From Ministeria vibrans ATCC 50519 (lineage: Eukaryota; Protista; Filasterea), in NCBI GenBank assembly GCA_943704425.1, contig CALSCP010000086.1, positions 1-43,120 of the forward strand: 43,120 bases of DNA, read 5' to 3'. Each line of letters starts with the position of its first letter. Within the stretch, counting starts at the first letter, position 1. The position numbers were made by a program, and so were the translations under genes. Shown in pieces: positions 551-16,924 of this stretch. Under the pieces are notes generated by a model. It was not told the origin of the DNA and did no database searches. It saw only the letters and a list, made by a program, of their open reading frames with translations.

Positions 551-3500
551 TTACAAAAACTCTTCATCCGCGAGTGCGGGTGCATCGTCTTCTTCGTCCT
601 CTTCGCCAAACAAACGGCGCTCCCACTCGTCCAGCACCTTGCCCAGGTCCCGCTCGCGCACCACATGTCGCTTTGAGTTGACTGCGTCCATGCGCAGTTC
701 CTCCTCGAGCCGCATGCGAATTTCGCTGAAGCGAGGACGGTTTTCGGGCTTGCGCGACCACACATCGCGCAGCACAGAAAAGAGTGCCTCGGGACATGCG
801 GCAGGCTGAGGCAGGCGGCCTCCATCCTCAATGAAGCGCACCAGACCACTCGTCGGCACATCCCCGTATGGCCGTAGCGACCCCAGGGTGAGCACCTCCC
901 ACACGAGCACGCCGTACGACCACACATCCGACTGCACTTCGTACACCCCTTCAATCAGCACCTCGGGCGCCATCCATCGGATCGGTAACTTGCCCCCCTT
1001 GGGCATCACATAGCGGCTCTCGCCTTCGTTCAACATGATCGCAAGGCCAAAGTCGCTCACCTTGACCAGATTGCCCGTGTAAATGAGACAGTTGCGCGCC
1101 GCCAGATCTCGATGAATCACTCCGCGCGAGCCCAAAAAGTGCATTCCTTGCGCCACCTGACTGCAAATCTGCAAAAACTCATTGTACGCAATGACCATCT
1201 GACCCTGGAGCGAGTGCACGCGACGCATAAAAGTGCGCAGGTCGCCGTGCTGGGCACAGCTCGTCACAATGAGCCAGGGCGGCCGGTCCATGCACACGCC
1301 CATGAGATCCAGTACGTGCGGACAGCCCGCCAGCTCCGACAGCAGCTGTGCCTCGGCAATGAAGTCATCCATGTCGCGCTGCGACGCAGACGGATTCAGT
1401 GTCTTCACCGCGACAAACTCGCGCGGACGGTCGCTCTTGCCGCGCGTCGTCGACGCCCGAATCACATAGCCAAACTGACCTTTGCCAATCTCCGAGTCAA
1501 ACTCAAGCCAACTGCGTACAAACTGATGGTCGAGCAGCAGCGCATTGACCTCCTCTGCATCGTCGTCCGCGTAAAAGCCGTCAATGCTAGTGCCCAGCGT
1601 CGCCTGCGGCATCTCCTTGAACACATCGTGGTGCGTCGCGCGCTCCTTCTCGCGCGACTTGGTCGACTTGCGGCGCACTTGACTCTTCTGAGGCAACGAC
1701 GGAACACGCTTGGGCAGCGCTACAGAACGTGGACCAGCAGCGGGCACAGGACGTGACGGAGGCGGTGGAAGACGCGCCGAAGCAGCACGCGACACTGCCG
1801 GCGCGCTGCCCGGCTCAACGTACTCATCACCGTTCAACGCTCGAGGTGGTAGTGATGCAGCCGCACGCATTTGCGGCTCTTGTTTGTTACCCATGATACG
1901 CTCCATGGGATTCGTGTCGTACACCTGGTCCGTGTCCGTATTGCCGTACGTGTGATCGTCGTCGTACGGCAGCTCCGTATCGCGCACCGCGTTACCATAA
2001 ACCTGGCCTTCGCTTGCGTCCGCTGTCTCGCCCACAAAGCCACCCTCCAGCTTGAGCACACGGTTGCCATACACATCGTCGTCACCGCCCCCTTCGGCGT
2101 CGACTGTCTCGCCCGTCGTCGGGAACTGAAAGACGCCCAGAGACCGCTGCACAATCCCATTATCATACAGCTGCAACTCGTCGCCCTCACCCACGTTCAG
2201 GTACTCGTCGTCCTCGGCGCGCGTATTGTCCTCGAGATCGTCCACAAAGTGATAGCCATGCGCATACTCGCCATCGTTAAGCTGAGGTACCACAAAGCGT
2301 CCCGCACCCTTGCGCGACTCACCCCGCCGACGACGCTGGAAACGACGCTCGGGCGGCAGGTCCGGTGCCGGCAGTGCCTTGGACGAGCGTCGCTTGAGGT
2401 CCTCCAGCAACTCGCCGTTCTCGTCGTACTCGGCCGCGGCAGGGTCGCGCGAGATGGACGCACGCGAGTCCATCAGTGGCAGCTTCGACGACTGTCGCCC
2501 AAACACCATCGGATTCACCGTCATGTCCATCGACGAGCGCATCATATCGTTGTCTTCGGAGCGCGACGATGACAGGCGCGCTCGCTTCGACCCGCCACGA
2601 TGGTTGCGTCGGACCACCACAAAGATCACAATGAGCGCAAGCAGAATAATTCCAATGGCCGCTCCCGCATACAGTCCTACATTCGAACTCGATGCTGCAC
2701 CCACCACACCCGCATCGTACGCACCCGCAATGACACTCAGGTGGCGCAACGTGCCCCGCACCACCTGAGCAGTCTCGTTCACGACGGTCGCCTCGACCTC
2801 CTCAAAGTCCGCACCACTCGACGACGCATGCACACGAATGGTCGCCCACTTCGACTGCACCACAGCGCCCGCGTCGATGTCAATGGTCACCGTCACACCC
2901 GCACCACCAAAGACAGTGCCACTCGGCTCGATGCGGAAGTACTGGGTCGTCGCCAGTTGATAGGAGTCTGGGAACGCCGCAACACTCGTGCTGTTGGCCG
3001 GAATGGCGTACGCCGTAAAGACAATCGCGCTGGCGACAGCGCCCACCGCAAATTCAAGTTGGAACGAGCCACAAGCAGCACTGCTGCTCGTCAGCACGCC
3101 GCCCGACGCATCTATCGTGCCGCGCGCACACAAGTCATCGAGACGCGTCTCGCACAACGTGCCCGTGTAAGGGAAGGCACAGTTACACGTGTAGGCAGCA
3201 AGGCCGTCCTGGCACACGCCCGCATTTAGGCAAGGCATCGAGGCACATTCGTCAATAGGACTGGCACACGTGGCGCCGTCAAAGCCCGTCAACGCACAGT
3301 CACACAAAAATGAGGCGACGCCGTCAGCGCACACTCCGCCATTAGCACACGGCGACGACGCACACTCGTCAATGGGACTGACACACGTGGCGCCGTCAAA
3401 GCCCGTCAGCGCACAGTCACACAAAAATGAGGCAACGCCGTCAGCGCACACTCCGCCATTAGCACACGGCGACGACGCACACTCGTCCATGTTTGTCGAG

Positions 3501-6500
3501 CACACGGCGTCGGTGTAGCCGGCGGTACAAGTGCACGTGTGTCCTAGATGAATGTCCACACAAGTGGCGCCATTCACGCACGGCGATGACGCACACTCGT
3601 CAATGCTCGTCGAGCACACGGCGTCGGTGTAGCCGGCGGTGCAAGTGCACGTGTATCCTAGATGAATGTCCACACAAGTGGCGCCATTCACACACGGCGA
3701 CGACGCACACTCGTCGGTGGCCACCTCACACACCACACCCGTAAAGCCGGTCAGCGCACAGTCGCACGACCACTCGAGCAATGCATCGTGCGAACACACA
3801 CCACCATTGCGACAGGGCGACGAGTCGCAGCCCACCGAGGCAATGTCGCCGCACGACTTGCCTTGGAAGCCCGTGTCCGTACAGTTGCACTGGTAGTCAC
3901 CTGTAAGCTCGGTGCAAGTACCACCATTGCGACAGGGACTGCTCGCGCACTCGAGACCCTCTTCACAAGAAACGCCCGTGTACGCTTCGGGACAGGTGCA
4001 CGCATACGCATCCAAACCGTTCGCACACGTCCCGCCATTGGCACACGGCGATGACGCACACTCATCAATGTCTGCACACGTCAGCGCACTGCCTGTCCAC
4101 TCGCCGCCCATGCATGCGCGTGTCAGGTTTCCCGCACTCGGCGCAAAGCCCGCGTCGCACGCTTGCACGCACTGCACATTCTCAATGGACGTGGCTGGAC
4201 ACACCGGCGTGCCGTTGCTGGGCGCTGGCACCTCGGGACACACCTTGAGACACACCTTGAGACTCTCGGTGGACCACAGCGCCGATGCAAGACACGTCAC
4301 GTTGGTACGCAATCCCGCCGTCGACAGAGTATACCCTGCAACACACGTGTACGAACACTGATCGCCAAGACGCTGTGTGCCACAGCCACTTGTGTCCAAC
4401 GTAGAACTGACAGGCGCTCCACCAAACACGCCGCAGTAGCCGCTAATGAGCGAATCGCACGCGAGTGACTCCCAACCGGGCGCGCATGTGCACTGCCCCG
4501 ACGACGAACAACTCGTGCCCGTCGCACCTGCACTCGTGTCACAGCCACACGGTGTGCACGTAGCCGCGGCAGCGGTCGCCAGTGCACCGTACGAAGTTGC
4601 CTCGCAATGACACTCAAACGTACCATTTACGTTCACGCACACATTGCCCGTCTGCGTCGCGCACTCCACAGCACCCGCATGGCCCGCGGAACACTCGTTA
4701 ATATCCTCGTCGCAGAGCGTCCCGTTGTAACCGGTGCCCGTGCACGTGCACGTAAACACACCCACAGCAACCTTGGTACAGGTGCCGCCATTGTGGCAGG
4801 GCGATGACTCGCACACGTCCAACTCCACATGACAAAACTGTCCGCCCCAGCCAACGGCACACGTACACGAACCGTCGCCCGACGCTCCGTCCGCACACGT
4901 TCCCCCATTGAGACAGTTGCACGACAAGCACTGCGGTCCATAGCGATCGGAAGGGCACCCACCGCAGACGCCGTCACCCGCAAGTCCGTCGTTACACGTG
5001 CCTGTCTGGCACGAAGGCGTGCATTGTGCCAAGCAACTGTTTCCGTACCGACCCTCTTCGCAGTCTTCGCAGTTGACGCCACCATAGAATTGCGGACAGG
5101 TGCATTCGTAGGCGCTCGTCGTGGCGTTGGTGCACGTACCGCCATTCTGACACGGATCCGACGTGCACGGCACAAAGATCGTCTCGCACCGTTCACCCGT
5201 ATACAGCTCGGAGCACTCACAGCCAAAGTTGGAGGCAGGACGCTCAAGACAGGGCATGCCAAACATGCAAGGATCTGTCTCGAGCACCCAGTACACACCA
5301 AACTCCACAGTGCCCGTGCGACCCTCCACGGTGCCCGTGCCTGTCTTTGTGCCCGCCGTTGCCGCCAACAATCTCGCTCCGAGTTGGTCGCAGATGGCGA
5401 CAAAGCCAGCGTTGTTTGTCACGGCGATGTAGCCGCCGTTGCTACGCACGTGCGCAAGGCCACCAATGCTCGACAGTAGCGGATTACCCGTGATCAACAG
5501 ACCCGTGCCCACCGTCACAAGACCCACCAGTCCATCGACGTGCGCCAACTTCTGATTGTCCACCACCCACACGTATCCGTCGACACGGCTGAGCTGCGAG
5601 AATCCCTGGAAGAAGATCTCCACATTGCCATTGCTGCCAATCACAAGATTGCCACCGACATGACTCAACGAGGCGGGCCCCTCCAGCGACTGCAATTTTA
5701 AATTGTTCTCGACGCGCAAATCACCCCCGACACTCTCGAGTGCCCCCAGTCCCGTCGTCAGCACCAGCTCGAGGTTGCCGTCAATCACAAAGCTACCCGT
5801 GACATTTCGCAGACTTCCAAGTCCCCCCAGCGACAACAGACCACTGTTGGACTCGATCAGAAAGTCGCCGACAACCTCCTCGAGCGCGTCAAGACCAGAC
5901 ATGGACGAGAAAAGCCCATTGGCATTGTTGCGAATGTCAAGACCGTGCACCGACGCAAGCGACGAAAGCGCCCCTAACGAACTGATAGCGGTCAGGCCTG
6001 CACCGTCAATGACAAGGGGTGGACCCCTGAGCACCACACAACCGGCAAAGGCATTGAGCTGTGCCATAGTGTTGACAACTGTCCCAGGGTTCACACACTG
6101 AGTCGTGTCCACCTCGCACAGGTCCCCCGTGGTGCCCGACGGACAGGCACACACAAAAGCAGGGTACACGGTGGGCATGCATGTGCCACCGGCGGTGCAT
6201 GGTGACGAGGCACACACATCAATAGCGGATTCGCACAGCTCGCCCGTGAATCCGGGTGCACACAAACATGTAAACGAGTCGGTCAGGTGCGACGAAGTGC
6301 AATTGCCATTGTTCTGACATGGCAGCGATGCACAGATGTCTTCGCCGCAGAAACAGTCGAGGGCACACGAAGTGCAATTCTCGTTGTGTTCCTCGCGACA
6401 GTAGCCATCGCCGCACTTTTCAAGCGGCACAATCGCCGTAATGTTGACACGATTGATCACCCAGCGACCGCGCGTGTTCGACGTCGGCGTAGGCTGGTGC

Positions 6501-9500
6501 CAGCGAAAGCGAACGGACGGGGCACGCGCAACGTCGGGCAGTATCAAACGGTACTCTTGATAGTCGGCACGCGCCGACCAGGTCAACAGCTCGTGCCAAA
6601 TGACACCACCCAGAATGGAATACTCAAAGTAGAGGCTGTCGGTGGCGGCGCTGACGCCCGTGCAGCTCGACGAGGCAAACGACAGCCAGAAAACGACCTC
6701 AGAGCCGTTGCGCATGTCCAGGTCGACTGTCTCGAGGTAGCGCGCTCCTTCGCCGTTAAACTTGAGGGCGGGCTCGTTCACATCGCACGACGACGTGTCC
6801 TTGAACACTTCGTTGCGCACCCGTGTAAAGTGTTGGGGATCAAGCTGGGCGGCGGACAGATCGTCTTCAAGGTACGACGGACGTGTCTCGGTCAAGCTGC
6901 ATGCCGCACCCGAGTAGCCTCGGTCGCACACACACGTGTGTGCTGCAATATCGCAACGACCGTGTCCCGAGCACATGTCGGGACAATTGGCAAACTCGCC
7001 CACAAGCACATTGTCGATGCCAAAGTCTTGTCCACTCGGGCCCGTCAGGTCTTGGTACCAACGAATGCGCAGACGCTCCGAAAGTTGTACAGGCAGGAAA
7101 ATGGGCAACTGGACAAGGTAGCCCCCTTGAGCATTGGGATCGGTGCGATCGTCGATGGAGGCAAACTGCGACGAGGCAAAGCGCATGGGACAGGTGACGC
7201 TGCCGTAGTCACTACACATCGTTGTGAGGGGCGCGTATGTCGCTCCGTCGTCCACCGAGTACTGCACCTCGACATCCATCAGAATGGAAGCACCATCGCC
7301 ACACAGGGGGTAGTACTCAAATTGCAAAAAGGGTCCGCTCGCCTGTCCATTGGTCACCAACTCGACACTGTCGAGGGACCACACATCCTTGTCCACCGCA
7401 TTCCCACCGAGTGTCTTTTGCAACCAACGGAACTGCGTCGTCTGGTGATGCACAGGCGTGTCAAGCAAAAGTACAACAGCAAAACTACCGGAGCGCTCGA
7501 CGTCGTAGGAGGCAAGAGTGGTCCATGTTGAGCCGCCATCGTGGCTGTACGAGACGATGACACCGTCGCCGGCCTCGAGTGGGTCACAGCCGTCGGTTCC
7601 CGTCGGGAAGTAAAGCGTAAAGTCGAGCGAGAGCGCACCAAAGGTGTTCATGGGTGCCGTCACCGCTTGACGAGTGCCAGCCTTAGTCATCGTGAGCGCC
7701 TTGGAGGCGACGCCACAGAGCGTCTGAGAATTGTAACCAATCGACAAGCTGTCCCAGAGCGATGTGGGAAGCGTGGTGCTGGACGAATAGCTGTCAAAAT
7801 CGTCGCCAAAGCCGAGAATGGAGGCACGCAGAGAATACAAGGTGGTATTAAGCTCGCGCGTTTGCAGTCGACGTGGACCAGTCACGTCGGCAAGCGCGTC
7901 ATCAACCAGAGCAAAGTGAGCAAGTGCGCTGCTGGTATTGCAACGGGGCGCGCTGTCGATGAGTCCATGGAACATCCAATTGGTCTCATCTACGGGATCA
8001 AAGGTGTCGGCCAGCACGGCGGGGTTCACGGCCGAACCTCCCGCATAGACATTGTCGAGGGCCCATTGGTCGTTGGACGAATAGGAGTATTGAAGCCAGC
8101 GAAAGCGCACTGTCTCGCCCGAGCGTGTCCACGACGGTAGGAGCATGTAGTAGTGATGCGATGTGCCGTCTATTTCGTCGATAATCTGCCACGAGCTGCC
8201 GCCGTCGACCGACGCGAAGAGAGCAATAGTCTCCGCCGGCACCACATACCCCGAGCATAGATTGCTCTCGCCCCGCATGATGCTGGCAAACTCAACAAAG
8301 GTGGGACCACCGGCGGCGCGTGTCACGTCAATATCCGGTGTGTCCGCGTAGCGTTGCTGCACGTTCTCCAAGTCAAAGAAGAGTGAAAACGTTCCGTGAG
8401 TTTGCACGCGACAAGGGTTCTTTTGCACGCTCCCACCCACAACGGTTACAAAGTTGTTGCCGTCCAACTCGGATGCGTCCAGCATGTCGCGAAAATACGG
8501 CAAGAGTGTGCCCGCGTCGGCGACACACGCCACACCCGAGGTGGACCTCGTATAGCCACTGTCGCACACACACGCGCCCGCCACACACACGCCATGGCCC
8601 GAACAAAGGGTGCCGCATGAGGAGTCCACCGAGATGCTCGCAAGTGCCCATTGGGCTGCCGAAAACGGTTGCGTGGCGTCCACAAGACGAAAGCGCGTCG
8701 AGGGACCACGCGCCTGTAATGGCACAAATGTCGACATGCGACGGTAGTCGGTGTTGAGGAAGTTGCTCGAGTGGAATGAAGTAATGGTGCGAAATTGTGC
8801 GCACGACTGGCACGATGACCAGAGGTTCTGCCAAGTGGTGCCCAAGTCCACCGAGTATTGCAACTCGACCACCTTGTTCTCGTTCAGGGTGGTGCCACAG
8901 CCCATTTGTATTTCAACATTGACCACAGAGGAGCGCTCGAGAGGCGCCGCATGCACGGCAATCTCGTCAAGCGCCCACTGATCGTTGGTGCCCGAGGTCG
9001 TGATGGGCTGCGTCCAGCGCAACTGCAGCGTGTCGACACGCGCCTCAACTGGCAGCACCACAGACAGGTCGGTGCCGCGCGGATCAGTGTAGGGGGACTC
9101 GGGCGCATACTGTCCCAGCAAGTGATAGCTCGCACCGCCATCTACGGTGTACTGCAACACGACATCCTCCTGCGCATCCACCAACTTGCAGTTGGTGAAT
9201 CCCGCTGCAGCATCGTCGGGACCACCCAGTTTGATCCAAAAGGTGACACGCTCAGCAAGCGAGCCGCTCAGCACGGGGGTGAGCACGGTACGTGACGAGC
9301 CGGTGGCAAAGAGAGCATAGCCTGCCTTAGCGCCACACGTCACCGAGCCGCCCATGGCCTCGACAAACTGCGACGGAGTGCTTGTGCTCTCGACACTCTC
9401 GTAGAAGAGCAGGCCCACCGAAGAGTTGGTGGCGACGGGACGCAGCTGGACCTCGCGACGAACGTAGGCGTCGTCAAGGGTGGTCACAGCGGAGGCAAGT

Positions 9501-12500
9501 ACATTGGTGCGTGTGCAGTAGGCGGCAGAGTCAGTCATGAGCGGCGTAAAGAGGACCTCTGAGGCAGTGAGCGGCGCCACGGACACACTGCGACTAGACG
9601 GATAGCCATGCGTGCTGTTGCCGCCAATAAAAAGGTCGTCGAGACCAAATGCACGACGGGTGCTAGAACTCTGGGAATCGGTGCGTAACTGGATCCAACG
9701 GAAGCGCGTGCGGGCGGTCCGTGCACGCGAGGGGATCTCCACGACCGACGTGGCGCCCGTACTCCACGGACTTGACGGGGTGTAGGTAAACATGTGTGTC
9801 CAGTGAACGCCCGAGTCAGTCGAGTACATGAGGTAGACGTTGGAACCGGCGTCCTGAGAGCCGCCACACTTGGAGCCGAGCACAATGTTCACCTGGATAA
9901 AATGTCCGTCCCGCATGTCGAGATCGACCGTGGTAGCACCACGCTGCGACGTGGCATCGGTGGTAAAAAGCAGGTAGGTGCCCTCGCTGACAAGACCACA
10001 TTGGCCGCTGTTGTCGCTGGCCTGGATGAGTTCGCCTGCCACAATGGACGCCCAAGTGTCGGCACGAATGGTGTCGATGCGATCGAAAATCTCGGTGGCC
10101 AAAGGCGTGTTGGGCACGCACGTGGAGCCCGAGGCAGAGTAACCCGTGTCGCAGAGACACGTGCCACCGACGCGACACATGCCGTGACCGCCACAGTAGT
10201 CGGGGCACTCGTGTCCCACATAAAGATCGTCAATGGCCCACTCGCGCGTCGTCGAACCCCACGTGCCCGCTTGGCGCAGTCTAAATTGTGTGTGAGGGGA
10301 TGCGGCGGCCGTGTCCACAATGGGGAAGGTGACGCGTGTGTAGGCGGGACGGTGGGCCTCCGAGGTGAAGCGGGCAATGGGAGGCGCATCCAGGGAGCAG
10401 AGGACCGAGTCAAAACCAAACGAGGAGAGACAGGCCATGTGAACGGGCGACTTCCAGGTCACACCGCGGTCCGTCGAGTACTCAAGGAAGACGTCGCGAT
10501 CGTAGGCGACGTTGACACCACAACCAATGTTGAGCGAGAATTGCACAAAGGTCGCGACCTGCTGGGTGGGTTTGGCGCGCACAAAGAGCACCGAATCAAG
10601 CGACCAAAAATTACGCGAGTCGACAAACGTCGTCTGACGCCAACGGAAGCGCACGCCCATGGTGCGCGCGGCGGCGGGCAGGTTCATCACGCGTTGCACG
10701 GCGCCCACACGAATGGGGTCAGATGTGTCGAGGGTCGCGCCCGGATCAACTTCGAGAAGGGTGCTCCATAGCGACGCCTGGTTCGCGTCGAGACCCGCCG
10801 CGAGATACTCGAGCACCATGTTGGCACCCGAGTAAGGAGCGTTGCACGCGGTCGAGCCAGTGCCACCCGAGTGGCCCGCCTGCAGCCAAAAGACAACCGC
10901 CTCAAAGTCGCTCGCATTCAGAGGCTTTGTCATGAGAGAGCGAGTGGCGCCGCCAGTCGAAGTGAACACGGCCGAGTGGCTGCTTGAGAGTTCCTTGAAA
11001 CACAAATCCGTACTCAAGATGACACCCGACGCGGTGTCCCACCAGCTGGCGAGCGAACCCGAGTCGAACGAGTCGTAGTAGAGATCGTACTGTTCGCTTC
11101 GGGTGTCAATGGAGCGCGTGGTCACTGCACGCGTGAGGCCCAGGCCACTAAAGTGCAGAACTTGCTGACGCGCACAAAAGGTGCCGACCGCACCGTTGGG
11201 GTGAAACAGAAAGTTGCTCTCGTCAATCGTGTCGAATTGATCGTCCAGCGACGCAACGACTTCGGCACCACCCACAAAAAAATCGTCGATGGCCCAGTCG
11301 TCGGCGTTGGGCGACGAAATGAGCACTTGTTCGATGCGCAGGCGCGTTGCATTGGTCCAAGCACCCTCGGGCAAGGCGTAGACGTAGGACTCACTGACCT
11401 GCACCGAGGCCGAGCCGTCGCCAAGCGTCGCCACGTAGGTCCAGGTGGTGCCGCCGTCGGTTGAGTACGAGAGAGTGACGGGCTGGGAGGAGGACACCGA
11501 GGAGCAGTACGAGCCGGAGCCACTGGACTGGGTAAAGAAGGCGACCTGGAGCACGTCGCCCTCACGAATGCGCATGTCGACAGTCTCGGCTGAGCGTGCT
11601 GTGGAGGCACTGAAGATGAGACGCGTCCCATCCGACGCAGCTGTTGTGCCACAATCGACGCCCGTCGCGACTGCGCCCACGATTCGCGACCACACGTCGG
11701 CGGGTGGAGTGGTGGTCCATTCAAAGGTGTCGCGCAGAGTGGAGACACTGGGCACGGAGGGCACACAGCTGAGGAGAGGGTCGTTGACAAAACCCGAGTC
11801 GCACACGCACACACCCGTGGCACACGATCCATGGCCGTTGCAGTAGCCCGGGCATTTGTTGGTGAGGACGACGCGAGCGACGCTCCACTCGTTGGCCGTG
11901 GTGAGCGCGGAGGCGTCCGGTTGAGCAATGCGAATGCGCGTACCGGCCGCCGCAAGTGCGTTGGAGGCAACGGCTGCTTCGGGAATGGGAATGAAAAAGC
12001 GTGTGCGACTCGACAGGCGTGCGGGAGGGTAAAGGGTGTTGTGGACGATATTTGTAAGGCATCGTTCGGTGCCGGGCAGGCACTTTTCGTAGAGCGGCTC
12101 CCACGTAATGCCTTGGTTCACGGAGTAGGACAACTCGAGGGCGTCCGAGTCGCCAAGGCCCGACGGCACGCACTGGCCCAGCTGGAGGCTGACTTCGAGC
12201 GTGGACATGTTTTCGCTGCGCAGATTTACACGTTCCACGACCACACTGTCGAGGCCCCACTCGTCAAAGTTGAGCCCCGAGTTGCTCTGCTGGCTCCAGC
12301 GGAACTCAACGGCGGACGCCTGAGCTGGAGGCGTGCGACCCGCCAGGGACTCGGAGACAAAGACGGGTCCTCGGTGGCTGCTCGATGTGTAGATTGCGAT
12401 AGGATGGAAGGAAGTGCCGCCGTCGACGGAGTACGACAAGGTGACGCCCTCTGTCGCGGCGTCGGCCAGGTGACAATTGATGCCACCGCCAATGGAGATG

Positions 12501-14831
12501 TAGAAGCCAATGGTGGGCATGTCGCGCGTGTCGATGGGCTGTGTGCTCGCAAGACGCGTCCCGGCCTGGTTGAAGTAGAGAAAGTTGCTGCCTTGCATCG
12601 GCCCGCATCCGCCCCCGCCGTTGGACGGGGCACCACCAATGGGTGTTTGCCACTTGGTTGCGTCAAGGTTGGTCGTGGTGAAGGTGTCGAAGAAACGCGT
12701 GGTGATGTGCGAGTGAAGCTCTAGGGGCACCGAGACAAGTTGACGCAGGCCTTGGAGTCCGCCAAACGCGAGAGCGGGACCCGCACCGCACACATCCGAC
12801 TTGAGAACACTGTTGGGTCGCGATGTCCAGTAGGCGTTAGTGACGCTTGAGGAGACGGCAAAATCCTCGATGATTTCAGAGAGGGGTCCAGCCGCGAGAC
12901 TGCCGCCTAGCACGACATTGTCAATTTGAAACCTGTCTGCAGTGGCGCTGCCAAAAAATGGCATTTCCCAGCGAAAGCGAATCGATGCGTGTCGCAGACG
13001 GTCGTCGATGAGGAAGGAGACGTGGCGGGACACAAGGAAGAGGGTGTAGGGAAAGTCACTGATGAGGTGCCAGGAGGCGCCGCCGTTGGTGGAGTACGAG
13101 AAGACGGGACGGTAGGCAATGTTGGGGGCGCCGCATGCACCGCCACCGTACTGCAAGAGAAATTGCAGGAAAACGGCATCGGTGGTGTCAAGATCACGCG
13201 TGGTCGCATGACGCACAGGATCGGATGAGGCGCCAAAGAAGAGGGTGTTTCCCGCGGCCATGGTGTTGCAAATGGCAACGGTGGTGCGCGCAGCGCCCGC
13301 GAGCGAGTCCCACACGTCGGTGCGAGGCTGATTTGTGTCGAAATCGTCTGAGAAAGCGCCCACCAGCGACGTGTTGTTGGTTGCGGGAACGCAGGCATTG
13401 TCGGCGACAACATACGAGTAGCCAGAGTCGCAGAGGCAGCCGCCGCCCTCGGCGGCGGTAAGGCAACGCCCGTGACCCGCGCACCCATTGGGACAGTTGG
13501 GTCCAAAGTAGAAGTGAGCCAGCGCAAACTTGTTGACGGACGAGAGGGGGTTGCTGACGGTAAAGTCTTGGCGGATGCGAAAGGACACTTGCTCGAGGGG
13601 AAAAAGCGGTGCATTGAGTTGGTAGGCAATGCGCCGCCATGCAGAGCCGTACTCGCTGAAGACAAAGCGGCTTTTGGCCTGGTAGCCCAGAGAGTAGTTG
13701 TTGACTGCGTCAAAGGTGGGTGTGTCGACGACGACGTTGCTGAAGGAGGCGCCTCGATCCGTCGAGTATTCGAGATAGATGTCGTTGTCGTTGTTAATGG
13801 CGGCGCTGTTGGTACAGCTGTCGCCCATGAACAGCTCAAATTGAATTGTGTAAGAGGGTGTGAGGGCGGTGCGTTGGGCGAGCGTCTCCGGTTGGCCGAA
13901 GATGCGCAGCTCATCAATGTACGCGTGAGTTTCCGTGTTGTCAAGCTGAATCCAGCGCAGCGACGTCTGTTGAGTGCGTGCAGCAAGGGGTAGCGTGTGC
14001 GAGATGGGCTGGTAGCCGAGGGTGAGGTCGACGTAGCCAAAGGTGGACCAGGCCGAGCCACCGTTGGTGCTGTACTGGATGGAGATGCCGTTGCCGGAGA
14101 CGCCAAGGGGCGCGTTCGAAGCGACGACGCCGCCGACAAAGTAAATGGCGGTGATAGAGTGAGCAAGCCGCAAATCGAGGTCGCGCGTTGTGATGTGGCC
14201 CTGGTCGCCCAGGGTCGTGGACAGACGGTAGGCGAGGGAGCGGGTGCCGGCAAGGGCAGTGACGAAGCCCCCAAGAGAGGTAAACCAGGTGGAGGAGGCA
14301 AGCGGGGAGGTGTTGAAGTCTTCGTAGAGCAAAGGTAATGGGGCGCGAAGCACTGACGAGACATTGAGGTTGGTGGTGGTGATTTCACGACGACCGCTGG
14401 TGCCCGAGAAGAGGACGGCGTCACGACCACACCAGGTTGACACTTGGCCATTGTCGGCGAACAACCAGTAGGGTTCGTTGAGAGAGGAAGCAGCAAAGGT
14501 GTCAGCAAACTCGACGGTGGACGCGCTTGGGCCGCCGATGTAGATGTTGTCGATGGACCAGGGACTGTCTGCATTCGTGATGGTGGGTTGTGTCCAGCGA
14601 AAGCGCACCGCGGCCTTTTGGGCGGTATCTGGAAGCGACGTGGACACAAAGAGCGCCACATTACTGGTGGTGGTGTGTGTCGTAAGGGTTATCCAGGCGA
14701 CGCCCGCGTCGACGCTGTACTGAACGAGGACATTGTCACCGCTCCTGAGTGTGCCACAGCCGGTGCCTGCACCGCCGCCCATCCGAATGTGGTACTGCAC
14801 GACAGCGGCGTCGCGTGTGTCGATGTCCTCA
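551..14831 (-). CDS. Giant receptor tyrosine kinase with Reelin-repeat ectodomain (single 14,281-nt exon, at least 4759 aa, 5'-incomplete)
   Basis: Uninterrupted ORF. The track's 'M' at 14800 is a GTG; the frame extends to a splice acceptor (ctttgtAG at 14833-14832, phase 2) reading EDIDTRDAAVVQYH, with an in-frame TGA upstream at 14846-14848. Order N to C: Reelin-like repeats, CGDGxC cysteine-rich motif, EGF x2, L-domain-like repeats, EGF/laminin-EGF/sushi/cbEGF stalk, ZU5-like, TM, Tyr-rich linker, TK (IGKGQFG, VAVKTL, HRDLAARN, DFG, LPIRWMAPE, SDVWSYG), stop TAA at 551-553. Confidence 0.93.
706..1507 (-). other. Protein tyrosine kinase domain of the giant RTK
   Basis: GKGQFG P-loop, VAVK Lys, alphaC Glu (FIAEAQ), TK-type catalytic loop HRDLAARN, DFG, KLPIRWMAPE, SDVWSYGV. 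All catalytic residues are present. Confidence 0.97.
2612..2680 (-). other. Single transmembrane helix of the RTK
   Basis: VGLYAGAAIGIILLALIVIFVVV followed by the basic stop-transfer RRNHR, giving type I topology. Confidence 0.93.
2722..3130 (-). other. ZU5-like membrane-proximal extracellular domain
   Basis: GTIDASGGVL...LEF..GAV...FRIEPSGTVF...VTVTI...LRHLS resembles the ZU5 pattern (GxxxxxGGxL...L.IP.GA...GP.G..F...HFS). Confidence 0.6.
3140..5270 (-). other. EGF / laminin-type EGF / sushi (CCP) / calcium-binding EGF stalk
   Basis: Many [14 protein letters not shown]..Y/FxCxC..G Notch-type EGFs. Laminin-EGF-like CTPCGCDTSAGATGTSCSSSGQCTCAPGW. Two sushi-like modules (CSYTCVAGY...C..W; CVQACDAGF...CMGGEW). 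Confidence 0.88.
3251..3716 (-). repeat. Two pairs of near-identical tandem EGF-coding duplications (117-bp and 114-bp units)
   Basis: [35 protein letters not shown] x2 (offset 117 nt) and [20 protein letters not shown][YH]TCTCTAGYTDAVCST x2 (offset 114 nt), with only a few nucleotide differences. Confidence 0.93.
5385..6097 (-). other. Receptor-L-domain-like beta-helix (about 8 repeats of ~25 aa)
   Basis: Cap CVVLRGPPLVI followed by repeats L..L..V.G.[LF].I..N (LSSLASVHGLDIRNN, LDALEEVVGDFLIESN, LGSLRNVTGSFVIDGN, LGALESVGGDLRVENN, ...), as in EGFR/insulin-receptor L domains. Confidence 0.8.
6430..14831 (-). other. Reelin-like repeat array (16 Asp-box subdomains, 5 Reelin-type EGFs)
   Basis: Recurrent T.D[LI]DT...[LV]QF.L..GC...L.YS.DGG.[TS]W...FRW.Q....WA[IL]D pattern, one copy with a degenerate Asp-box. 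EGFs of the form Cxx.C.GHG.C...C.CD.GY/F start at about 13495, 11854, 10207, 8617 and 6985. Confidence 0.9.
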
Positions 14832-14854
14832 CTACAAAGCAGGCGTCAATGCAC

Positions 14855-14888
14855 GTGTGTGTGTGTGTGTGTGTGGAGCATTGAGGAT

Positions 14889-14970
<82 letters not shown>
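14855..14970. repeat. (GT)n plus (GA)n microsatellites; probable assembly junction
   Basis: GT run 14855-14875 and GA run 14893-14970, lying between the EXPERA exon-3 donor and the RTK acceptor. Confidence 0.95.
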
Positions 14971-14975
<5 letters not shown>

Positions 14976-15004
14976 TGTAATAAATGGAGTGTGTTGCTCA
15001 GTAC

Positions 15005-15452
15005 CATAGGCCCAGAGCAGAGCGGGAATCCGGATCCAGGCACGCTCGTTCAGGATTGCATAGACGGCAACAAGGTAAAAGGGGGCATACAAGACGGGAG
15101 AGAACCACGCCATGGTGTTGTACCACACATTGTTGACATGCAACATCGGATCGACTGCAGTCGCCCACCAGAAGTACTAACACAAAGAGACAGTCAGACG
15201 GACGGCGTGCGGACGAATCGAATGCGTACATGGTCCCACACAAAGGATGGGGGGAACGGGAGTGCTTTGAGTTGCTCGAGCGTCGCATTGGCGGGTGCAA
15301 GCGACTGCGCGAGATCAATCATAATCGCGATCACGAAGAACACAGCAAAGCCTAATCAAAACAGAACAAGGTCAACTGCCCGATTCCCAACAGCAATATA
15401 TATGGCATTGAGGCGTACACAGGACAAGGAGAAGATCAAGGGAGCGCGCCAT
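15005..15452 (-). CDS. EXPERA-domain (EBP/TMEM97/TM6SF family) membrane protein, 5' exons only
   Basis: Exons 15452-15419, 15351-15230 and 15176-15005, with GT-AG introns in consistent phase, give MARSLDLLLVLCFAVFFVIAIMIDLAQ...HYFWWATAVDPML...WYNTMAWFSPVLYAPFYLVAVYAILNERAWIRIPALLWAY. The 'DP....W......PF....YA.....W.R.PAL' pattern is EXPERA-like. No 3' exons found. Confidence 0.75.
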
Positions 15453-15532
15453 TGTATAAAAGTGTGTGAAAGTAATATTTTTGTTTTGAGTGAAAATTTC
15501 AAAGTTCCAACACCTTTTTTTCTCCAAGATTG

Positions 15533-16924
15533 ATGTGCTCCCACATCACAGTAGGTTTGATATTTGCCCTCGTGGCTGGCTTGGCGATCCACGTCGTTGA
15601 TCATGTCGAACATGTACGAAAATTTCGAAATATCCGTTTCCATCATCGCTCTGTCGGCTGACACGCCGCGTAGCACAACACCGAGCCGTCCATGTACAGT
15701 TCGTTTGACTTGGACCCGACCAACGCCAAGAGGATAGCAGTGCGCGACGGCCTCCTGCTCCACTGCCAGGAGATCCCCTGCGCCGACCCCGCGCGCGTCC
15801 TTGTCTTCGTCCACGACGGCGGCGACCACAGCGGCCGCTACAAGCACCTTGCGTCCGAGTTCAAGCACACCGCCGCCGCCTACTTGTGCGATCTGCGTGG
15901 CCATGGACGCTCTCAGGGTCGTCGATTTTACGCTCTTTCGTATCAAGAGTACGTGAGTGACATTCACGCCATCATTCAACATGTCCGTCAGCGCCACGCT
16001 CGCGTTCCACGTACGCCTCTCCCTCAACGTGTAGTCCTCTCTCTCTTACACACGTTTCCTCCTCCTCCTCCTCTCTCTATCACTTTGTTTCTCTCTATCA
16101 CTTTGTTTCTCTCTATCACTTTGTTTCTCTCTATCACTTTGTTTCTCTCACTATCACTTTTGTTTCCCTCTCTTCTCTCTCTCTCTATCACTTTGTTTCT
16201 CTTTCTGTCTCTCTCTCTTTATCTCTTTCCCTCTCTCTATCCCTCTCTCTATCTATTATTTATCCATCAGTGACTCTGATTGGCCATGGAACTGGCGCTG
16301 TGCTTGCCACGCTTGCGGCCTTACCCAACAGCGACGCAGAGGGTGCCGACGCGACTCCATCGAGTCTGCTGCCCGACTCATTGATTCTCACATCACCATG
16401 TTTTGCCCAGGGCCGTCTGGGCATCATTCCGTATCAGTCGTTGCTGGCCGACGCCGTCTCCTTCCTCCTCCCCTACTTTGAACTTGAGGCTGTTCCCAGC
16501 TGTTTGCGCACCGCCAACAATCAAACCGACGCCCAGTTCGACAATGACAAGTATGTCTTTCACGGCAAAATTCCCGGTGCGATCAAACCTTCTCGCGTCG
16601 TATCCCAACTCATTATTATTGTTTTTTAACGCAGTGCGCACTGCCGTCGAGCTGCGCAACGCCGCGCTCGCGGCAAGTCGCGCCCTGTCATGGCTTCCCA
16701 TGCCTGTTTTGGTCCTGCACGGCGACGCCGACCGTCTGTGCAGCTTCGAGGCCTCCAAGGCGGTCGCCGAGTCGGCCGGTTTCTCCTTCACTACCCGCAC
16801 GCGCGGCTCTCGCATTCGCCTCTTTCTCTCTCTCGTCCAGGGTCCCCATGATCTCTGGCACTCCACGAAGGCCCGTGAGGTCTTTGATTCCATCGTCGAA
16901 TTCTTCTCTGCTCTTCCAACGTAA
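15533..16924 (+). CDS. Monoglyceride-lipase-like alpha/beta hydrolase (Hydrolase_4 type) with N-terminal hydrophobic segment; nucleophile Ser replaced by Gly
   Basis: Exons 15533-15613, 15674-16010, 16271-16576 and 16635-16924 are phase-consistent. Motifs VFVHD..DHSGRY, DLRGHGRSQG, LIGHGTG (elbow), PVLVLHGDADRLC, GPHDL. Confidence 0.85.
16073..16200 (+). repeat. 18-bp intronic minisatellite CTCTCTATCACTTTGTTT; degenerate copies elsewhere
   Basis: About 4 perfect tandem units plus degenerate ones. Related copies at about 17960-18050, 26575-26590, 35470-35500 (reverse complement) and 36680-36700 (reverse complement). Confidence 0.85.

What the first reader, a model, noticed from the sequence alone, without database searches (positions are those of the whole stretch)
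551..14831. Giant Reelin-repeat receptor tyrosine kinase: a Reelin-like ectodomain fused directly to a kinase
Seen: one continuous, intron-free ORF carrying about 2800 aa of Reelin-type repeats, then L-domain, EGF/sushi stalk, ZU5-like domain, TM and an intact TK. Because it is all one exon, the fusion cannot be a gene-model artefact. Known: animal Reelin is a secreted ligand that signals via ApoER2/VLDLR, Dab1 and Src-family kinases, and has no TM or kinase. Inference: this is a membrane-anchored Reelin-repeat receptor that signals on its own, probably in a unicellular animal relative. It would be a candidate new RTK family and a possible pre-animal source or parallel use of Reelin repeats. 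I know of no described RTK with this architecture.
Basis: partly seen in the sequence, partly recalled or inferred. Interest (0 to 1): 0.92.

Follow-up and report, generated by a model that had tools for sequence, protein, structure and literature searches.

The report
Giant Reelin-repeat receptor tyrosine kinase
A marine single-celled relative of animals encodes and transcribes a huge membrane receptor that joins true Reelin repeats (known from an animal brain-patterning protein) to a working-looking tyrosine kinase, which suggests Reelin repeats were cell-surface signalling parts before animals existed.

Summary
The open frame is real: window 551-14831, minus strand, 14,281 bases without a stop. 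It holds 16 Reelin-type jelly-roll subrepeats with five Reelin-type EGFs. Then come two EGFs, a receptor L domain, about 14 more EGFs, two sushi modules, a ZU5 domain, one transmembrane helix, a 370-residue tail rich in YxN motifs, and a tyrosine kinase with every catalytic motif.

Animal Reelin is the only solved relative of the first 2,800 residues, and Reelins make up all 75 length-matched database hits.

It is not the whole gene. A spliced RNA contig shows the frame starts at an acceptor (exon begins at 14831) in the middle of a subrepeat. The contig runs on into an upstream exon that is missing from the assembly. The window's join across the (GA)n tract at 14893-14970 is probably chimeric.

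No protein combining Reelin subrepeats with a kinase appeared among the 150 best Reelin-like representatives, or among the 140 best kinase hits of 1,248-8,310 residues. Membrane-anchored Reelin-repeat proteins without a kinase do exist in a choanoflagellate, a sponge and one unnamed EukProt entry; the last has a cytoplasmic SH2 domain.

The scan already noted paralogous Reelin-repeat kinases on other contigs of this genome (s1-761891, s1-774561, s1-770239). I confirmed two of those loci myself.

Verdict: a new variant of a holozoan receptor tyrosine kinase; its function is inferred only.

The parts
551..14831 (-). Giant terminal exon (14,281 nt; 4,759 full codons, one split codon and the stop) of the receptor tyrosine kinase gene
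   Evidence: Stop-free frame. An RNA contig lies colinear on 10500-14831 and ends its match at 14831.
14832..14833 (-). Splice acceptor (ag); the exon starts at 14831 on the third base of a codon
   Evidence: Sequence ...ctttgtag|T. The loose end of RNA contig X6 record 11 begins behind 14831, and its letters continue the same subrepeat in frame.
14893..14970 (.). (GA)n tract, with (TG)n at 14856-14875, where the window is probably joined chimerically
   Evidence: DNA contigs of two runs break at 14846-14980. The genes on both sides splice to exons that lie elsewhere: the EXPERA gene's next exon is on contig C1980, and the RTK's upstream exon is nowhere in the assembly.
6431..14831 (-). Reelin-repeat region: 16 jelly-roll subrepeats (14 Asp-boxes) in five B-X-A-EGF units of about 545 aa, plus a final B
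   Evidence: Pfam PF21471 in 16 stretches; own HMM map; Reelin-only PDB hits; architecture string JJJe x5 then J; Asp-box count.
13391..13495 (-). Reelin-type EGF 1 (aa 436-470)
   Evidence: C..C.GHG.C...C.CD motif.
11765..11854 (-). Reelin-type EGF 2 (aa 983-1012)
10118..10207 (-). Reelin-type EGF 3 (aa 1532-1561)
   Evidence: Aligned to the EGF of a Reelin repeat in the R5-6 fragment 3a7q.
8525..8617 (-). Reelin-type EGF 4 (aa 2062-2092)
6899..6985 (-). Reelin-type EGF 5 (aa 2606-2634)
   Evidence: Aligned to the second Reelin EGF in 3a7q.
6095..6415 (-). Two EGF modules after the last subrepeat (aa 2796-2902)
   Evidence: Pfam EGF; motif map.
5201..6088 (-). Receptor L-domain-type solenoid (aa 2905-3200)
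   Evidence: A profile of 15 own-genome copies hits the L domains of LET-23, EGFR, ErbB, InsR and IGF1R at E about 1e-7. The nearest Atlas clusters are Recep_L_domain. Pfam is silent on this single copy.
4481..5200 (-). Cysteine-rich EGF-like stalk (aa 3201-3440, about 6 modules)
   Evidence: Pfam EGF, hEGF and EGF_CA; motif map.
4073..4480 (-). Two sushi/CCP-like modules (aa 3441-3576)
   Evidence: phmmer against PDB finds mainly CCP proteins: CR1 2e-7, factor H 1e-6, beta2-GPI 4e-5. Below Pfam's threshold.
3122..4072 (-). Array of 8 EGF modules, including two near-identical pairs (aa 3577-3893)
   Evidence: Pfam EGF in 8 stretches, 145 bits; module list. No copy above 81% identity elsewhere in the genome.
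2711..3121 (-). Extracellular ZU5 domain (aa 3894-4030)
   Evidence: The family profile hits ankyrin ZU5 at 4.9e-9. The AF2 model has pLDDT 85. Foldseek's best matches are the ZU5 domains of ankyrin, UNC5B and ZO-1. Two of 16 paralogues hit Pfam ZU5.
2735..2743 (-). H-L-S motif (aa 4020-4022) in the turn before the last ZU5 strand, 19 residues before the TM helix
   Evidence: In 16 aligned paralogous copies G and H are invariant and S is 90% or more (T in one); 17 of about 20 copies carry H-[FL]-[ST]. The model's strands are 124-129 and 134-140.
2612..2680 (-). Transmembrane helix (aa 4041-4063), followed by a basic stop-transfer stretch
1508..2611 (-). Juxtamembrane tail (aa 4064-4431) with five YxN motifs and proline-rich stretches
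   Evidence: Motif scan: Y4200, Y4212, Y4244, Y4268, Y4285.
707..1507 (-). Tyrosine kinase domain (aa 4432-4698)
   Evidence: Pfam PK_Tyr_Ser-Thr 268 bits. PDB kinases FGFR4, CSF1R and IGF1R at about 1e-57. All catalytic motifs present.
554..706 (-). Acidic C-terminal tail (aa 4699-4749)
   Evidence: Translation.

Best explanation
Window 551-14831 (minus strand) is the giant last exon of a gene for a type I receptor tyrosine kinase. The organism is a marine unicellular holozoan, probably the filasterean Ministeria vibrans.

Shown:
- The exon encodes, in order: at least 16 Reelin-type subrepeats (five expanded B-X-A-EGF repeats plus a last B), two EGFs, an EGFR/InsR-type L domain, EGF and sushi modules, an extracellular ZU5 domain carrying an H-L-S motif, one TM helix, a YxN-rich tail, and a kinase with all catalytic motifs.
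- It is transcribed and spliced to at least one upstream exon.
- Paralogues with the same domain order exist in the same genome.

Inferred mechanism:
- The long Reelin-repeat arm binds a surface, matrix or prey-derived ligand, or the same protein on another cell.
- Clustering brings the kinases together, and they phosphorylate the activation-loop tyrosine and the YxN tyrosines.
- These tyrosines then recruit SH2 adaptors of the Grb2 type.

More speculative: the ZU5 domain cuts itself at H-L|S, as PIDD, UNC5CL and NLRP1 ZU5 domains do and as adhesion-GPCR GAIN domains do at H-L|T. The receptor would then be a two-chain molecule whose huge outer chain can be pulled off.
For: - Frame and domains.
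- Reelin homology: only Reelin among PDB hits, with colinear A-EGF-B alignment. All 75 length-matched hits are animal Reelin, E about 1e-273. A-class subrepeats average 30 bits against Reelin and 8-14 bits against the other groups. The fold model's best match is the Reelin N-terminal region 6a48, E 3.7e-29.
- Other ectodomain parts: L domain; sushi; ZU5 with its conserved motif.
- Transcription and splicing: RNA contigs with introns removed cover the exon and define its 5' boundary.
- Assembly link between the Reelin part and the kinase: continuous frame, and no near-identical EGF array elsewhere.
- Paralogues: the same order (Reelin, L domain, ZU5, kinase) is found on C2128; Reelin, ZU5, kinase on C1961.
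- Link to phosphotyrosine signalling elsewhere: an unnamed EukProt protein has 17 Reelin subrepeats, a TM helix and a cytoplasmic SH2 domain.
Against: - The N-terminus is missing: no signal peptide was seen, and the upstream exon is absent from the assembly.
- The window is probably mis-joined only about 15-140 bases upstream of the exon.
- RNA colinearity was laid only for 10500-14831.
- There are no biochemical data on ligand, kinase activity or cleavage.
- Pfam itself does not call the L, sushi or ZU5 parts in this copy.
- The fold model of the repeat unit has low confidence (pLDDT 63).
- The organism's identity is circumstantial.
Confidence: 0.8

Rival explanations
1. The ectodomain mainly serves as a released, Reelin-like matrix or adhesion protein. 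After self-cleavage at H-L|S, or shedding, the giant outer chain leaves the cell. The kinase stub is then a by-product, or is switched on merely by loss of the outer chain, not by ligand-induced dimerisation.
For: - The H-[FL]-[ST] motif is conserved across about 17 divergent copies and sits in a tight turn before the last strand of a ZU5 fold next to the membrane.
- Animal Reelin is secreted and proteolytically processed (established knowledge).
- Weaker fold matches to autoproteolytic GAIN and NLRP1 domains.
Against: - No evidence of cleavage.
- Many ZU5 domains do not cleave.
- The intact kinase and the YxN tail argue for regulated signalling.
- This rival overlaps with the best explanation rather than excluding it.
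Confidence: 0.15
2. The link between the Reelin repeats and the kinase is an assembly artefact: two genes were fused in silico inside the repetitive EGF array.
For: - The same contig is probably chimeric at the (GA)n tract just upstream.
- By their lengths, the short-read contigs laid on the stretch would end near window 4040-4117, at the start of the EGF array.
Against: - The reading frame is kept across the whole array.
- No other locus shares more than 81% identity with the array, so there is nothing to mis-join with.
- Two other contigs carry the same domain order independently.
Confidence: 0.04
3. The kinase is a pseudokinase, and the protein is a pure adhesion or scaffold molecule.
For: None from the sequence. 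Giant adhesion-like ectodomains without enzymatic tails exist in the choanoflagellate and sponge relatives.
Against: - The glycine loop, VAVK lysine, HRDLAARN, DFG, PIRWMAPE and an activation-loop tyrosine are all present.
- 264-268 bits to PK_Tyr_Ser-Thr.
Confidence: 0.04
4. The gene is a contaminant from an animal, or a recent transfer of animal Reelin.
For: The best named hits of the ectodomain are animal Reelins.
Against: - Identity to Reelin is only 22-30%.
- The repeat unit differs.
- The genome holds five loci with such repeats and more than 100 kinase loci with the same stalk modules.
- The locus is found in culture DNA and RNA runs of three different years and in marine metagenomes.
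Confidence: 0.02

Closest known systems
Animal Reelin (RELN), including its irregular N-terminal region (PDB 6a48) and repeats R3, R5-6, R8 (2ddu, 3a7q, 7lyu)
   Same: - Jelly-roll subrepeats with Asp-boxes, split by the special C..C.GHG.C...C.CD EGF.
- Colinear A-EGF-B alignment.
- Three subrepeats in a row before an EGF also occur at the start of Reelin (JJJe). That region is the best fold match.
   Different: - Reelin is secreted, has a reeler domain and eight two-subrepeat repeats, and acts through ApoER2/VLDLR.
- Here every unit has three subrepeats.
- No reeler domain was found in the frame or the genome.
- The chain continues into L, EGF, sushi and ZU5 modules, a TM helix and a kinase.
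EGFR/ErbB and insulin-receptor families of receptor tyrosine kinases
   Same: - An L-domain solenoid followed by cysteine-rich modules, a single TM helix and a tyrosine kinase.
- L-domain profile match at about 1e-7.
   Different: - One long L-like solenoid, not an L1-CR-L2 arrangement.
- No furin-like domain was called.
- The kinase is at most 40% identical to, and not specifically related to, any animal family: ROS1, MET, InsR and FGFR score alike.
Lineage-specific receptor tyrosine kinases of unicellular holozoans (choanoflagellates, filastereans, ichthyosporeans; Suga et al., PMC4342544)
   Same: A large repertoire of RTKs whose ectodomains are shuffled independently in each lineage. This genome has more than 100 kinase loci.
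   Different: None of the searchable papers mentions Reelin repeats in such kinases. The size (over 4,760 residues) is also unusual.
Membrane-anchored Reelin-repeat proteins without a kinase: Salpingoeca infusionum EP00049_P002869, an unnamed EukProt protein of 4,693 aa, and Sycon ciliatum LOC135828544
   Same: Reelin-type J-e-J repeats followed by EGF modules and a C-terminal TM helix.
   Different: - Their tails are short or carry an SH2 domain, not a kinase.
- No match to the ZU5 or L-domain family profiles.
Self-cleaving ZU5 domains (PIDD, UNC5CL, the NLRP1/CARD8 FIIND) and the GAIN/GPS domain of adhesion GPCRs
   Same: - A beta-sandwich with an H-[FL]-[ST] triplet in the turn before its last strand.
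- ZU5 fold matches at E 1.5e-6, and weaker GAIN and NLRP1 matches.
- It lies next to the membrane, as a GAIN domain does.
   Different: - The known ZU5 domains are cytoplasmic (from memory); this one is extracellular and has no UPA or death domain.
- Cleavage is untested.

Membership tests
Reelin-repeat proteins (Pfam PF21471 subrepeats arranged A-EGF-B) | Several Reelin_subrepeat-B jelly rolls above the Pfam cut-off | tested here: met
   16 stretches, 858 bits against a cut-off of 27.
Reelin-repeat proteins (Pfam PF21471 subrepeats arranged A-EGF-B) | Subrepeats separated by the Reelin-type EGF, colinear with solved Reelin repeats | tested here: met
   One alignment runs through A, EGF and B of Reelin R5-6 (3a7q, 1.7e-63). 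There are five such EGFs.
Reelin orthologue (RELN) | N-terminal reeler domain | tested here: inconclusive
   PF02014 was not found in the frame or the genome. However, the N-terminal exon(s) are missing, and that search rang in no control genome either.
Reelin orthologue (RELN) | Eight canonical repeats with two subrepeats per EGF | tested here: not met
   The architecture is JJJe x5 then J, against JJJe(JJe)x7 J in Latimeria and Ptychodera Reelin.
Reelin orthologue (RELN) | Secreted, with no membrane anchor or enzyme domain | tested here: not met
   TM helix at aa 4041-4063 and a kinase at 4432-4698.
Receptor tyrosine kinase (type I membrane protein) | Tyrosine-kinase catalytic domain with the HRDLAARN and P[IV][KR]W[MT]APE signatures | tested here: met
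Receptor tyrosine kinase (type I membrane protein) | A single TM helix between the ectodomain modules and the kinase | tested here: met
   One hydrophobic stretch of 23 residues followed by RRNHR.
Receptor tyrosine kinase (type I membrane protein) | N-terminal signal peptide | not testable with these tools
   The first exon(s) are absent from the assembly.
Receptor tyrosine kinase (type I membrane protein) | Tyrosine kinase activity and ligand-dependent activation | not testable with these tools
   Needs biochemistry.
EGFR / insulin-receptor family | Receptor L domain | tested here: met
   The profile of own-genome copies hits L domains of LET-23, ErbB4, EGFR, InsR and IGF1R at 1e-7 to 2.5e-6. 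The single copy is below Pfam's threshold.
EGFR / insulin-receptor family | Furin-like cysteine-rich domain between two L domains, and a kinase orthologous to the family | tested here: not met
   No PF00757 and only one L region. The kinase is 33-40% identical to many families alike.
ZU5 domain | ZU5 fold and sequence profile | tested here: met
   Profile against ankyrin-B ZU5 at 4.9e-9. Foldseek ZU5 hits at E 1.5e-6, probability 1.00. Pfam ZU5 in 2 of 16 paralogues, best 2.4e-6.
Self-cleaving ZU5/GPS-type modules | Cleavage before the Ser/Thr of an H-[FL]-[ST] triplet | not testable with these tools
   The motif is present and conserved; cleavage needs a protein experiment.
Sushi/CCP | CCP module profile | tested here: inconclusive
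   Mainly CCP proteins are found in PDB (CR1 2e-7, beta2-GPI 4e-5 with one passing stretch). There is no Pfam Sushi hit at E<=1.

The most novel reading that the evidence does not exclude
Reelin repeats arose before animals as the outer arms of membrane receptors wired to phosphotyrosine signalling: a kinase here, an SH2 domain in another protist. Animal Reelin would be a secreted descendant of such a receptor. In addition, the extracellular ZU5 domain with its H-[FL]-[ST] motif would make this and about 17 sister receptors self-cleaving two-chain tyrosine kinases, a regulatory design known so far from adhesion GPCRs and not from RTKs.
Probability: 0.3. Interest if true: 0.85.

Novelty: new variant of a known kind. 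Interest (0 to 1): 0.68.

Why it matters
One review of matrix evolution groups Reelin among later-evolving ECM proteins (PMC3308698). It acts only as a secreted ligand.

Here true Reelin repeats sit in the same polypeptide as a tyrosine kinase, in a single-celled relative of animals. Related membrane-anchored Reelin-repeat proteins occur in a choanoflagellate and a sponge.

This moves the origin of the Reelin repeat to before animals. It also suggests the repeat's first job was at the cell surface, in contact or particle sensing coupled to phosphotyrosine signalling.

It gives students of holozoan signalling a concrete gene family. Aggregation RNA-seq data and culture methods already exist for the likely organism (PMC13366479).

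Finally, it points to a possible self-cleaving juxtamembrane module in receptor tyrosine kinases.

Tried and rejected
- Pfam on five separate pieces found no Recep_L, Sushi or ZU5 at E<=1.
- Single-sequence PDB searches of the L piece and the ZU5 piece gave nothing useful. Both parts needed family profiles built from own-genome copies.
- The Atlas look-up of the ZU5 piece was inconclusive.
- The reeler domain was not found in the genome, but that search rang nowhere, so it proves little.
- The upstream exon's 30-mer, 17-mer and 18-mer, all taken from the tool output, are absent from the assembly.
- I tested whether contig C2459 (which ends in a microsatellite) or C2017 could be the missing 5' part. 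Both carry canonical two-subrepeat Reelin repeats. The last exon seen on C2459 ends at a later point of a subrepeat than the point where my exon starts, so it is not the adjoining exon. A more distant link remains open.
- The AF2 model of one three-subrepeat unit reached only pLDDT 63. I cannot say whether the extra subrepeat is 'nested' inside subrepeat A, as note s1-774576 proposes. By score pattern it is B-like.
- Suga et al. 2012 (MvPTK names) is not held, and no supplements of the M. vibrans aggregation paper are held. I therefore could not check whether this kinase domain already has an MvPTK name.
Only the window's own exon was used by reference.
Full report
OBSERVATION

The window holds one stop-free frame on the minus strand. 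It runs 551..14800 (4749 aa) counted from the first GTG, and is open up to 14845. Pfam on the whole translation gives:
- Reelin_subrepeat-B in 16 stretches (858 bits, cut-off 27);
- PK_Tyr_Ser-Thr at aa 4432-4698 (264 bits);
- many EGF modules.

So the central claim, Reelin-type repeats and a tyrosine kinase in one uninterrupted frame, is true at the stated coordinates.

THE 5' END: NOT THE WHOLE GENE

The frame starts in the middle of a subrepeat. It is preceded by ...ctttgtag, then (CA)n and (CT)n tracts on the gene strand, and then the 5' half of an unrelated EXPERA/TMEM97-like gene.

I laid four public runs on 10500-16400 (5,901 letters, within the operators' limit).
- Two of the runs are RNA in fact. 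Their contigs lack three introns of the neighbouring genes: 15177-15229, 15614-15673 and 16011-16270.
- One RNA contig of 10,971 nt lies colinear on 10500-14831 and ends its match exactly at 14831. It then continues for 256 nt into sequence that is not in the stretch.
- Read on the gene strand, the 30 letters reported continue the same subrepeat in frame: ..FTGSTRFMQT joined to EDIDTRD. This matches the ..F.......R...T.D.D.. pattern found at the same point of the other subrepeats.
- The acceptor is therefore real, and the exon starts at 14831 on a third codon base.
- By its length, the contig should reach down to about window 4117.

The 30-mer and two shorter pieces of it are absent from the whole 29.7-Mb assembly. 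At least one upstream exon, the signal peptide and possibly more repeats are therefore missing.

The EXPERA transcript in turn splices from its donor at 15004 to an exon on another contig (C1980:62256-62285). That exon also abuts a (GA)n tract there. DNA contigs of two runs break at 14846-14980. The window's join across the (GA)n tract at 14893-14970 is therefore probably chimeric.

I built no spliced model. Every search used the window's own exon by reference.

IS THE REELIN-KINASE LINK ITSELF SAFE?

The only repetitive place between the two parts is the EGF array (3122-4072). By their lengths, the short-read contigs should end near there.

Three points argue against a join between genes:
- The best other match in the genome to 2900-4300 is 70-81% identical, apart from two matches of about 40 nt at 90-97%, so there is little for an assembler to confuse it with.
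- The frame is kept throughout.
- Contig C2128 carries Reelin subrepeats, an L domain, a ZU5 domain and a kinase in the same order and strand. C1961 carries Reelin subrepeats, a ZU5-like domain and a kinase.

I put an assembly artefact at about 4%.

THE REPEATS ARE REELIN REPEATS

For aa 1-2800 the only solved relatives are Reelin fragments: 3a7q/5b4x at 1.7e-63, then 2e26, 6a48, 2ddu and 7lyu. One alignment runs through subrepeat A, the EGF and subrepeat B.

In the 5.8-billion-protein index, all 75 hits of 2,612-8,310 residues are animal Reelins, from coelacanth to molluscs and crustaceans. E is about 1e-273 to 1e-149 at 22-30% identity.

An HMM iterated on the protein itself maps 16 cores and five Reelin-type EGFs, at aa 436, 983, 1532, 2062 and 2606. 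The period is about 545 aa. There are 14 Asp-boxes.

Written as a string of jelly rolls (J) and EGFs (e):
- this protein is JJJe x5 followed by J;
- Latimeria and Ptychodera Reelin are JJJe(JJe)x7 followed by J.

Each unit thus has one extra subrepeat (B-X-A-EGF). By its scores the extra one behaves like a B subrepeat.

Three subrepeats in a row before an EGF also occur at the start of animal Reelin. A fold model of one unit had low confidence (pLDDT 63). Its best match was still the crystal structure of the Reelin N-terminal region, 6a48, at E 3.7e-29 and TM 0.49, followed by the other Reelin entries.

- B and X cores score only slightly better against Reelin than against EGF-less arrays from bacteria and metagenomes (42 and 38 bits against 37 and 35).
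- The A cores are clearly Reelin-specific (30 bits against 8-14).
- The EGF-less arrays lack the Reelin EGF altogether.

The test is passed.

Paralogue C2128 mixes canonical JJe and expanded JJJe units. C2017 and C2459 have only canonical units. The expanded unit is therefore a local variant of the ordinary repeat.

THE STALK

Pfam sees only EGF in the separate stalk pieces. I therefore built family profiles from copies in the same genome.

(a) L domain, aa 2905-3200.
- The genome has more than 60 matches.
- A 15-sequence profile hits the L domains of LET-23, ErbB4, EGFR, the insulin receptor and IGF1R at about 1e-7.
- The nearest Atlas clusters are Recep_L_domain.

(b) Sushi, aa 3441-3576. 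PDB hits are mainly CCP proteins: CR1 2e-7, factor H 1e-6, beta2-glycoprotein I 4e-5. This support is moderate.

(c) ZU5, aa 3894-4030.
- At least 20 large frames in the genome carry this module just outside a TM helix.
- A 16-sequence alignment has G, H and one P invariant and S at 90% or more, within a G...H-[FL]-[ST] motif. Here the triplet is H4020-L-S4022.
- Its profile hits the two ZU5 domains of ankyrin-B at 4.9e-9.
- The AF2 model is confident (pLDDT 85; above 90 over the domain).
- Foldseek ranks the ZU5 domains of ankyrin, UNC5B and ZO-1 first (E 1.5e-6). Weaker matches follow to GAIN domains and the NLRP1 FIIND.
- Two of the 16 paralogues hit Pfam ZU5 directly.
- In the model the triplet lies in the turn between the last two strands, 124-129 and 134-140. 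The TM helix follows 19 residues after the serine.

THE CYTOPLASMIC PART

There is one TM helix (aa 4041-4063) followed by RRNHR. Then comes a 368-residue tail with five YxN motifs (Y4200, 4212, 4244, 4268, 4285) and proline-rich stretches. The kinase has GKGQFGYV, VAVK, HRDLAARN, DFG, an activation-loop tyrosine and PIRWMAPE.

Solved kinases of FGFR4, CSF1R and IGF1R match at about 1e-57. In the big index the nearest named kinases are ROS1, MET, the insulin receptor, FGFR and TYRO3, at 33-40% identity. The kinase belongs to no particular animal family.

IS THE ARCHITECTURE KNOWN ELSEWHERE?

I ran three searches aimed at it.
- Giant proteins (2,612-8,310 aa) with a similar kinase: 20 hits, none with PF21471.
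- Proteins of 1,248-3,971 aa with a similar kinase: 120 listed, none with PF21471.
- A full HMMER scan of 1.84 billion cluster representatives with two repeat units: 625 hits at E<=1e-3. None of the best 150, nor any of the 75 Reelins, contains a kinase detectable with this kinase domain at E<=1e-5.

Neither this protein nor anything more than 41% identical to it is in those collections.

Named non-Reelin relatives:
- a 3,549-aa protein of the choanoflagellate Salpingoeca infusionum;
- a 4,693-aa EukProt protein of unnamed source, with SRCR and pentaxin domains and 17 subrepeats;
- a 5,793-aa protein of the sponge Sycon ciliatum.

All three have Reelin-type J-e-J order and a C-terminal TM helix. 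The 4,693-aa protein has an SH2 domain in its tail (25.1 bits, cut-off 21). That gives a second, independent coupling of a Reelin-repeat ectodomain to phosphotyrosine signalling.

Limits of these searches:
- only the best hits were inspected;
- gene models of such giants are often truncated;
- Capsaspora and Pigoraptor could not be queried by name.

LITERATURE

- No searchable paper holds 'reelin' together with Capsaspora, Ministeria or filasterea, except a CRK paper about the animal pathway.
- The ten papers holding 'reelin' and 'choanoflagellate' concern the reeler domain of semaphorins or animal Reelin.
- None of the 30 listed papers (of 44) that use 'reelin repeats' or 'subrepeat' has a title or abstract about anything other than animal Reelin or unrelated topics.
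- A holozoan tyrosine-kinome survey does not mention Reelin.
- Hynes's review groups Reelin among later-evolving ECM proteins.
- It is well established that unicellular holozoans carry lineage-specific RTK sets with freely shuffled ectodomains (PMC4342544). A new ectodomain as such is therefore expected.

ORGANISM

The assembly has 29.7 Mb in 2,860 contigs and more than 100 tyrosine-kinase-like loci. The locus is found in:
- culture DNA runs of 2011 and runs of 2022;
- spliced RNA contigs of 2011 and 2025;
- marine algal and seawater metagenomes.

This fits the marine filasterean Ministeria vibrans. Genomic data for it were released with Ocana-Pallares et al., and an aggregation RNA-seq series was deposited in 2025 (PMC13366479). 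The names are coded, so the identification is circumstantial. Earlier notes of this scan reached the same guess.

HOW IT MOST LIKELY WORKS

Shown: the domain order, transcription, the splice boundary, the intact catalytic motifs, and the conserved ZU5 motif.

Inferred:
- It is a type I receptor whose very long, probably rod-like arm of Reelin repeats and EGFs binds a ligand, a surface or its own kind.
- Clustering then lets the kinases phosphorylate each other and the YxN sites, which are classical Grb2-type SH2 sites (established knowledge).

More speculative (about 30%): the ZU5 domain self-cleaves before S4022, as the H-F-S sites of PIDD and UNC5CL and the H-L-T site of adhesion GPCRs do (from memory of those families). 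The outer chain would then be held only by the last strand and could be shed or pulled off, which would regulate the kinase stub.

VERDICT

- It is a new variant of a known kind (a holozoan RTK) with an ectodomain not described for any kinase. It bears on the origin of Reelin.
- The scan had already flagged paralogues of this family on other contigs of the same genome (s1-761891, s1-774561, s1-770239).

Noticed in passing
window 14846-15451 and L001 (C1980:60756-63785): An EXPERA/TMEM97-like gene is split between two contigs. Its exons lie at 15413-15230 and 15176-15005 (minus strand) in the window, with a possible further 5' exon up to about 15451. The next exon lies at C1980:62256-62285. Both ends abut (GA)n tracts, so one or both contigs are mis-joined at the microsatellite.
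   Followed up: yes
window 15533-16400, plus strand: A hydrolase-like gene (note s1-774744 calls it MAGL-like) is transcribed. RNA contigs confirm introns at 15614-15673 (GT..AG, 60 nt) and 16011-16270.
   Followed up: partly
window 16040-16280; L001 1640-1800; end of L045 (C2459): A minisatellite with the unit AAACAAAGTGATAGAGAG recurs in introns of unrelated genes next to (GA)n and (GT)n tracts. It may explain the many contig breaks and mis-joins in this assembly.
   Followed up: no
window 10998 and 13949: All three covering runs (two DNA-like sets, one RNA) read T at 10998 where the window has A. This turns F1268 into Y, so the window base is probably an error or a private variant. At 13949, two runs read G (a synonymous change).
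   Followed up: yes
P0100 (EukProt, 4,693 aa), residues 4385-4583: A protist protein with 17 Reelin subrepeats, SRCR and pentaxin domains, a TM helix and a cytoplasmic SH2 domain: a membrane-anchored SH2 protein with a Reelin-repeat ectodomain.
   Followed up: partly
G000 contigs C2128, C2736, C124, C232, C320, C1708, C313, C879, C1664 and others (L003-L023): About 17-20 large receptor-like frames share the extracellular ZU5 module with an H-[FL]-[ST] motif just outside the membrane. Many have a kinase downstream. It looks like a lineage-wide stalk module of these receptors.
   Followed up: partly
G000:C1954:10609-21783, minus strand: One 4,377-aa open frame carries at least twelve L-domain-like matches in a row, which is an unusual tandem array of receptor L domains.
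   Followed up: no
P0076-P0085, P0245, P0246 (ENA/Logan metagenome proteins of about 1,300-3,200 aa): These proteins score 600-1,250 bits against a single 350-residue kinase query, so they must hold many tyrosine-kinase-like domains in tandem. Some also have SH2. Their source is unnamed.
   Followed up: no
P0104 (Bacteroidota MAG, 3,445 aa), P0096 and P0105 (ENA): One named bacterial (T9SS) protein and two unnamed ENA metagenome proteins carry 12-35 Reelin_subrepeat-B-like jelly rolls without any EGF. The bare subrepeat is therefore not restricted to eukaryotes.
   Followed up: partly
L044 (C2017:9000-18999) and L045 (C2459:28000-36364): Two further Reelin-repeat genes or gene pieces have canonical two-subrepeat units and introns inside subrepeats. 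C2017 continues into 12 EGFs and a TM helix. C2459 runs off its contig end in a microsatellite.
   Followed up: partly
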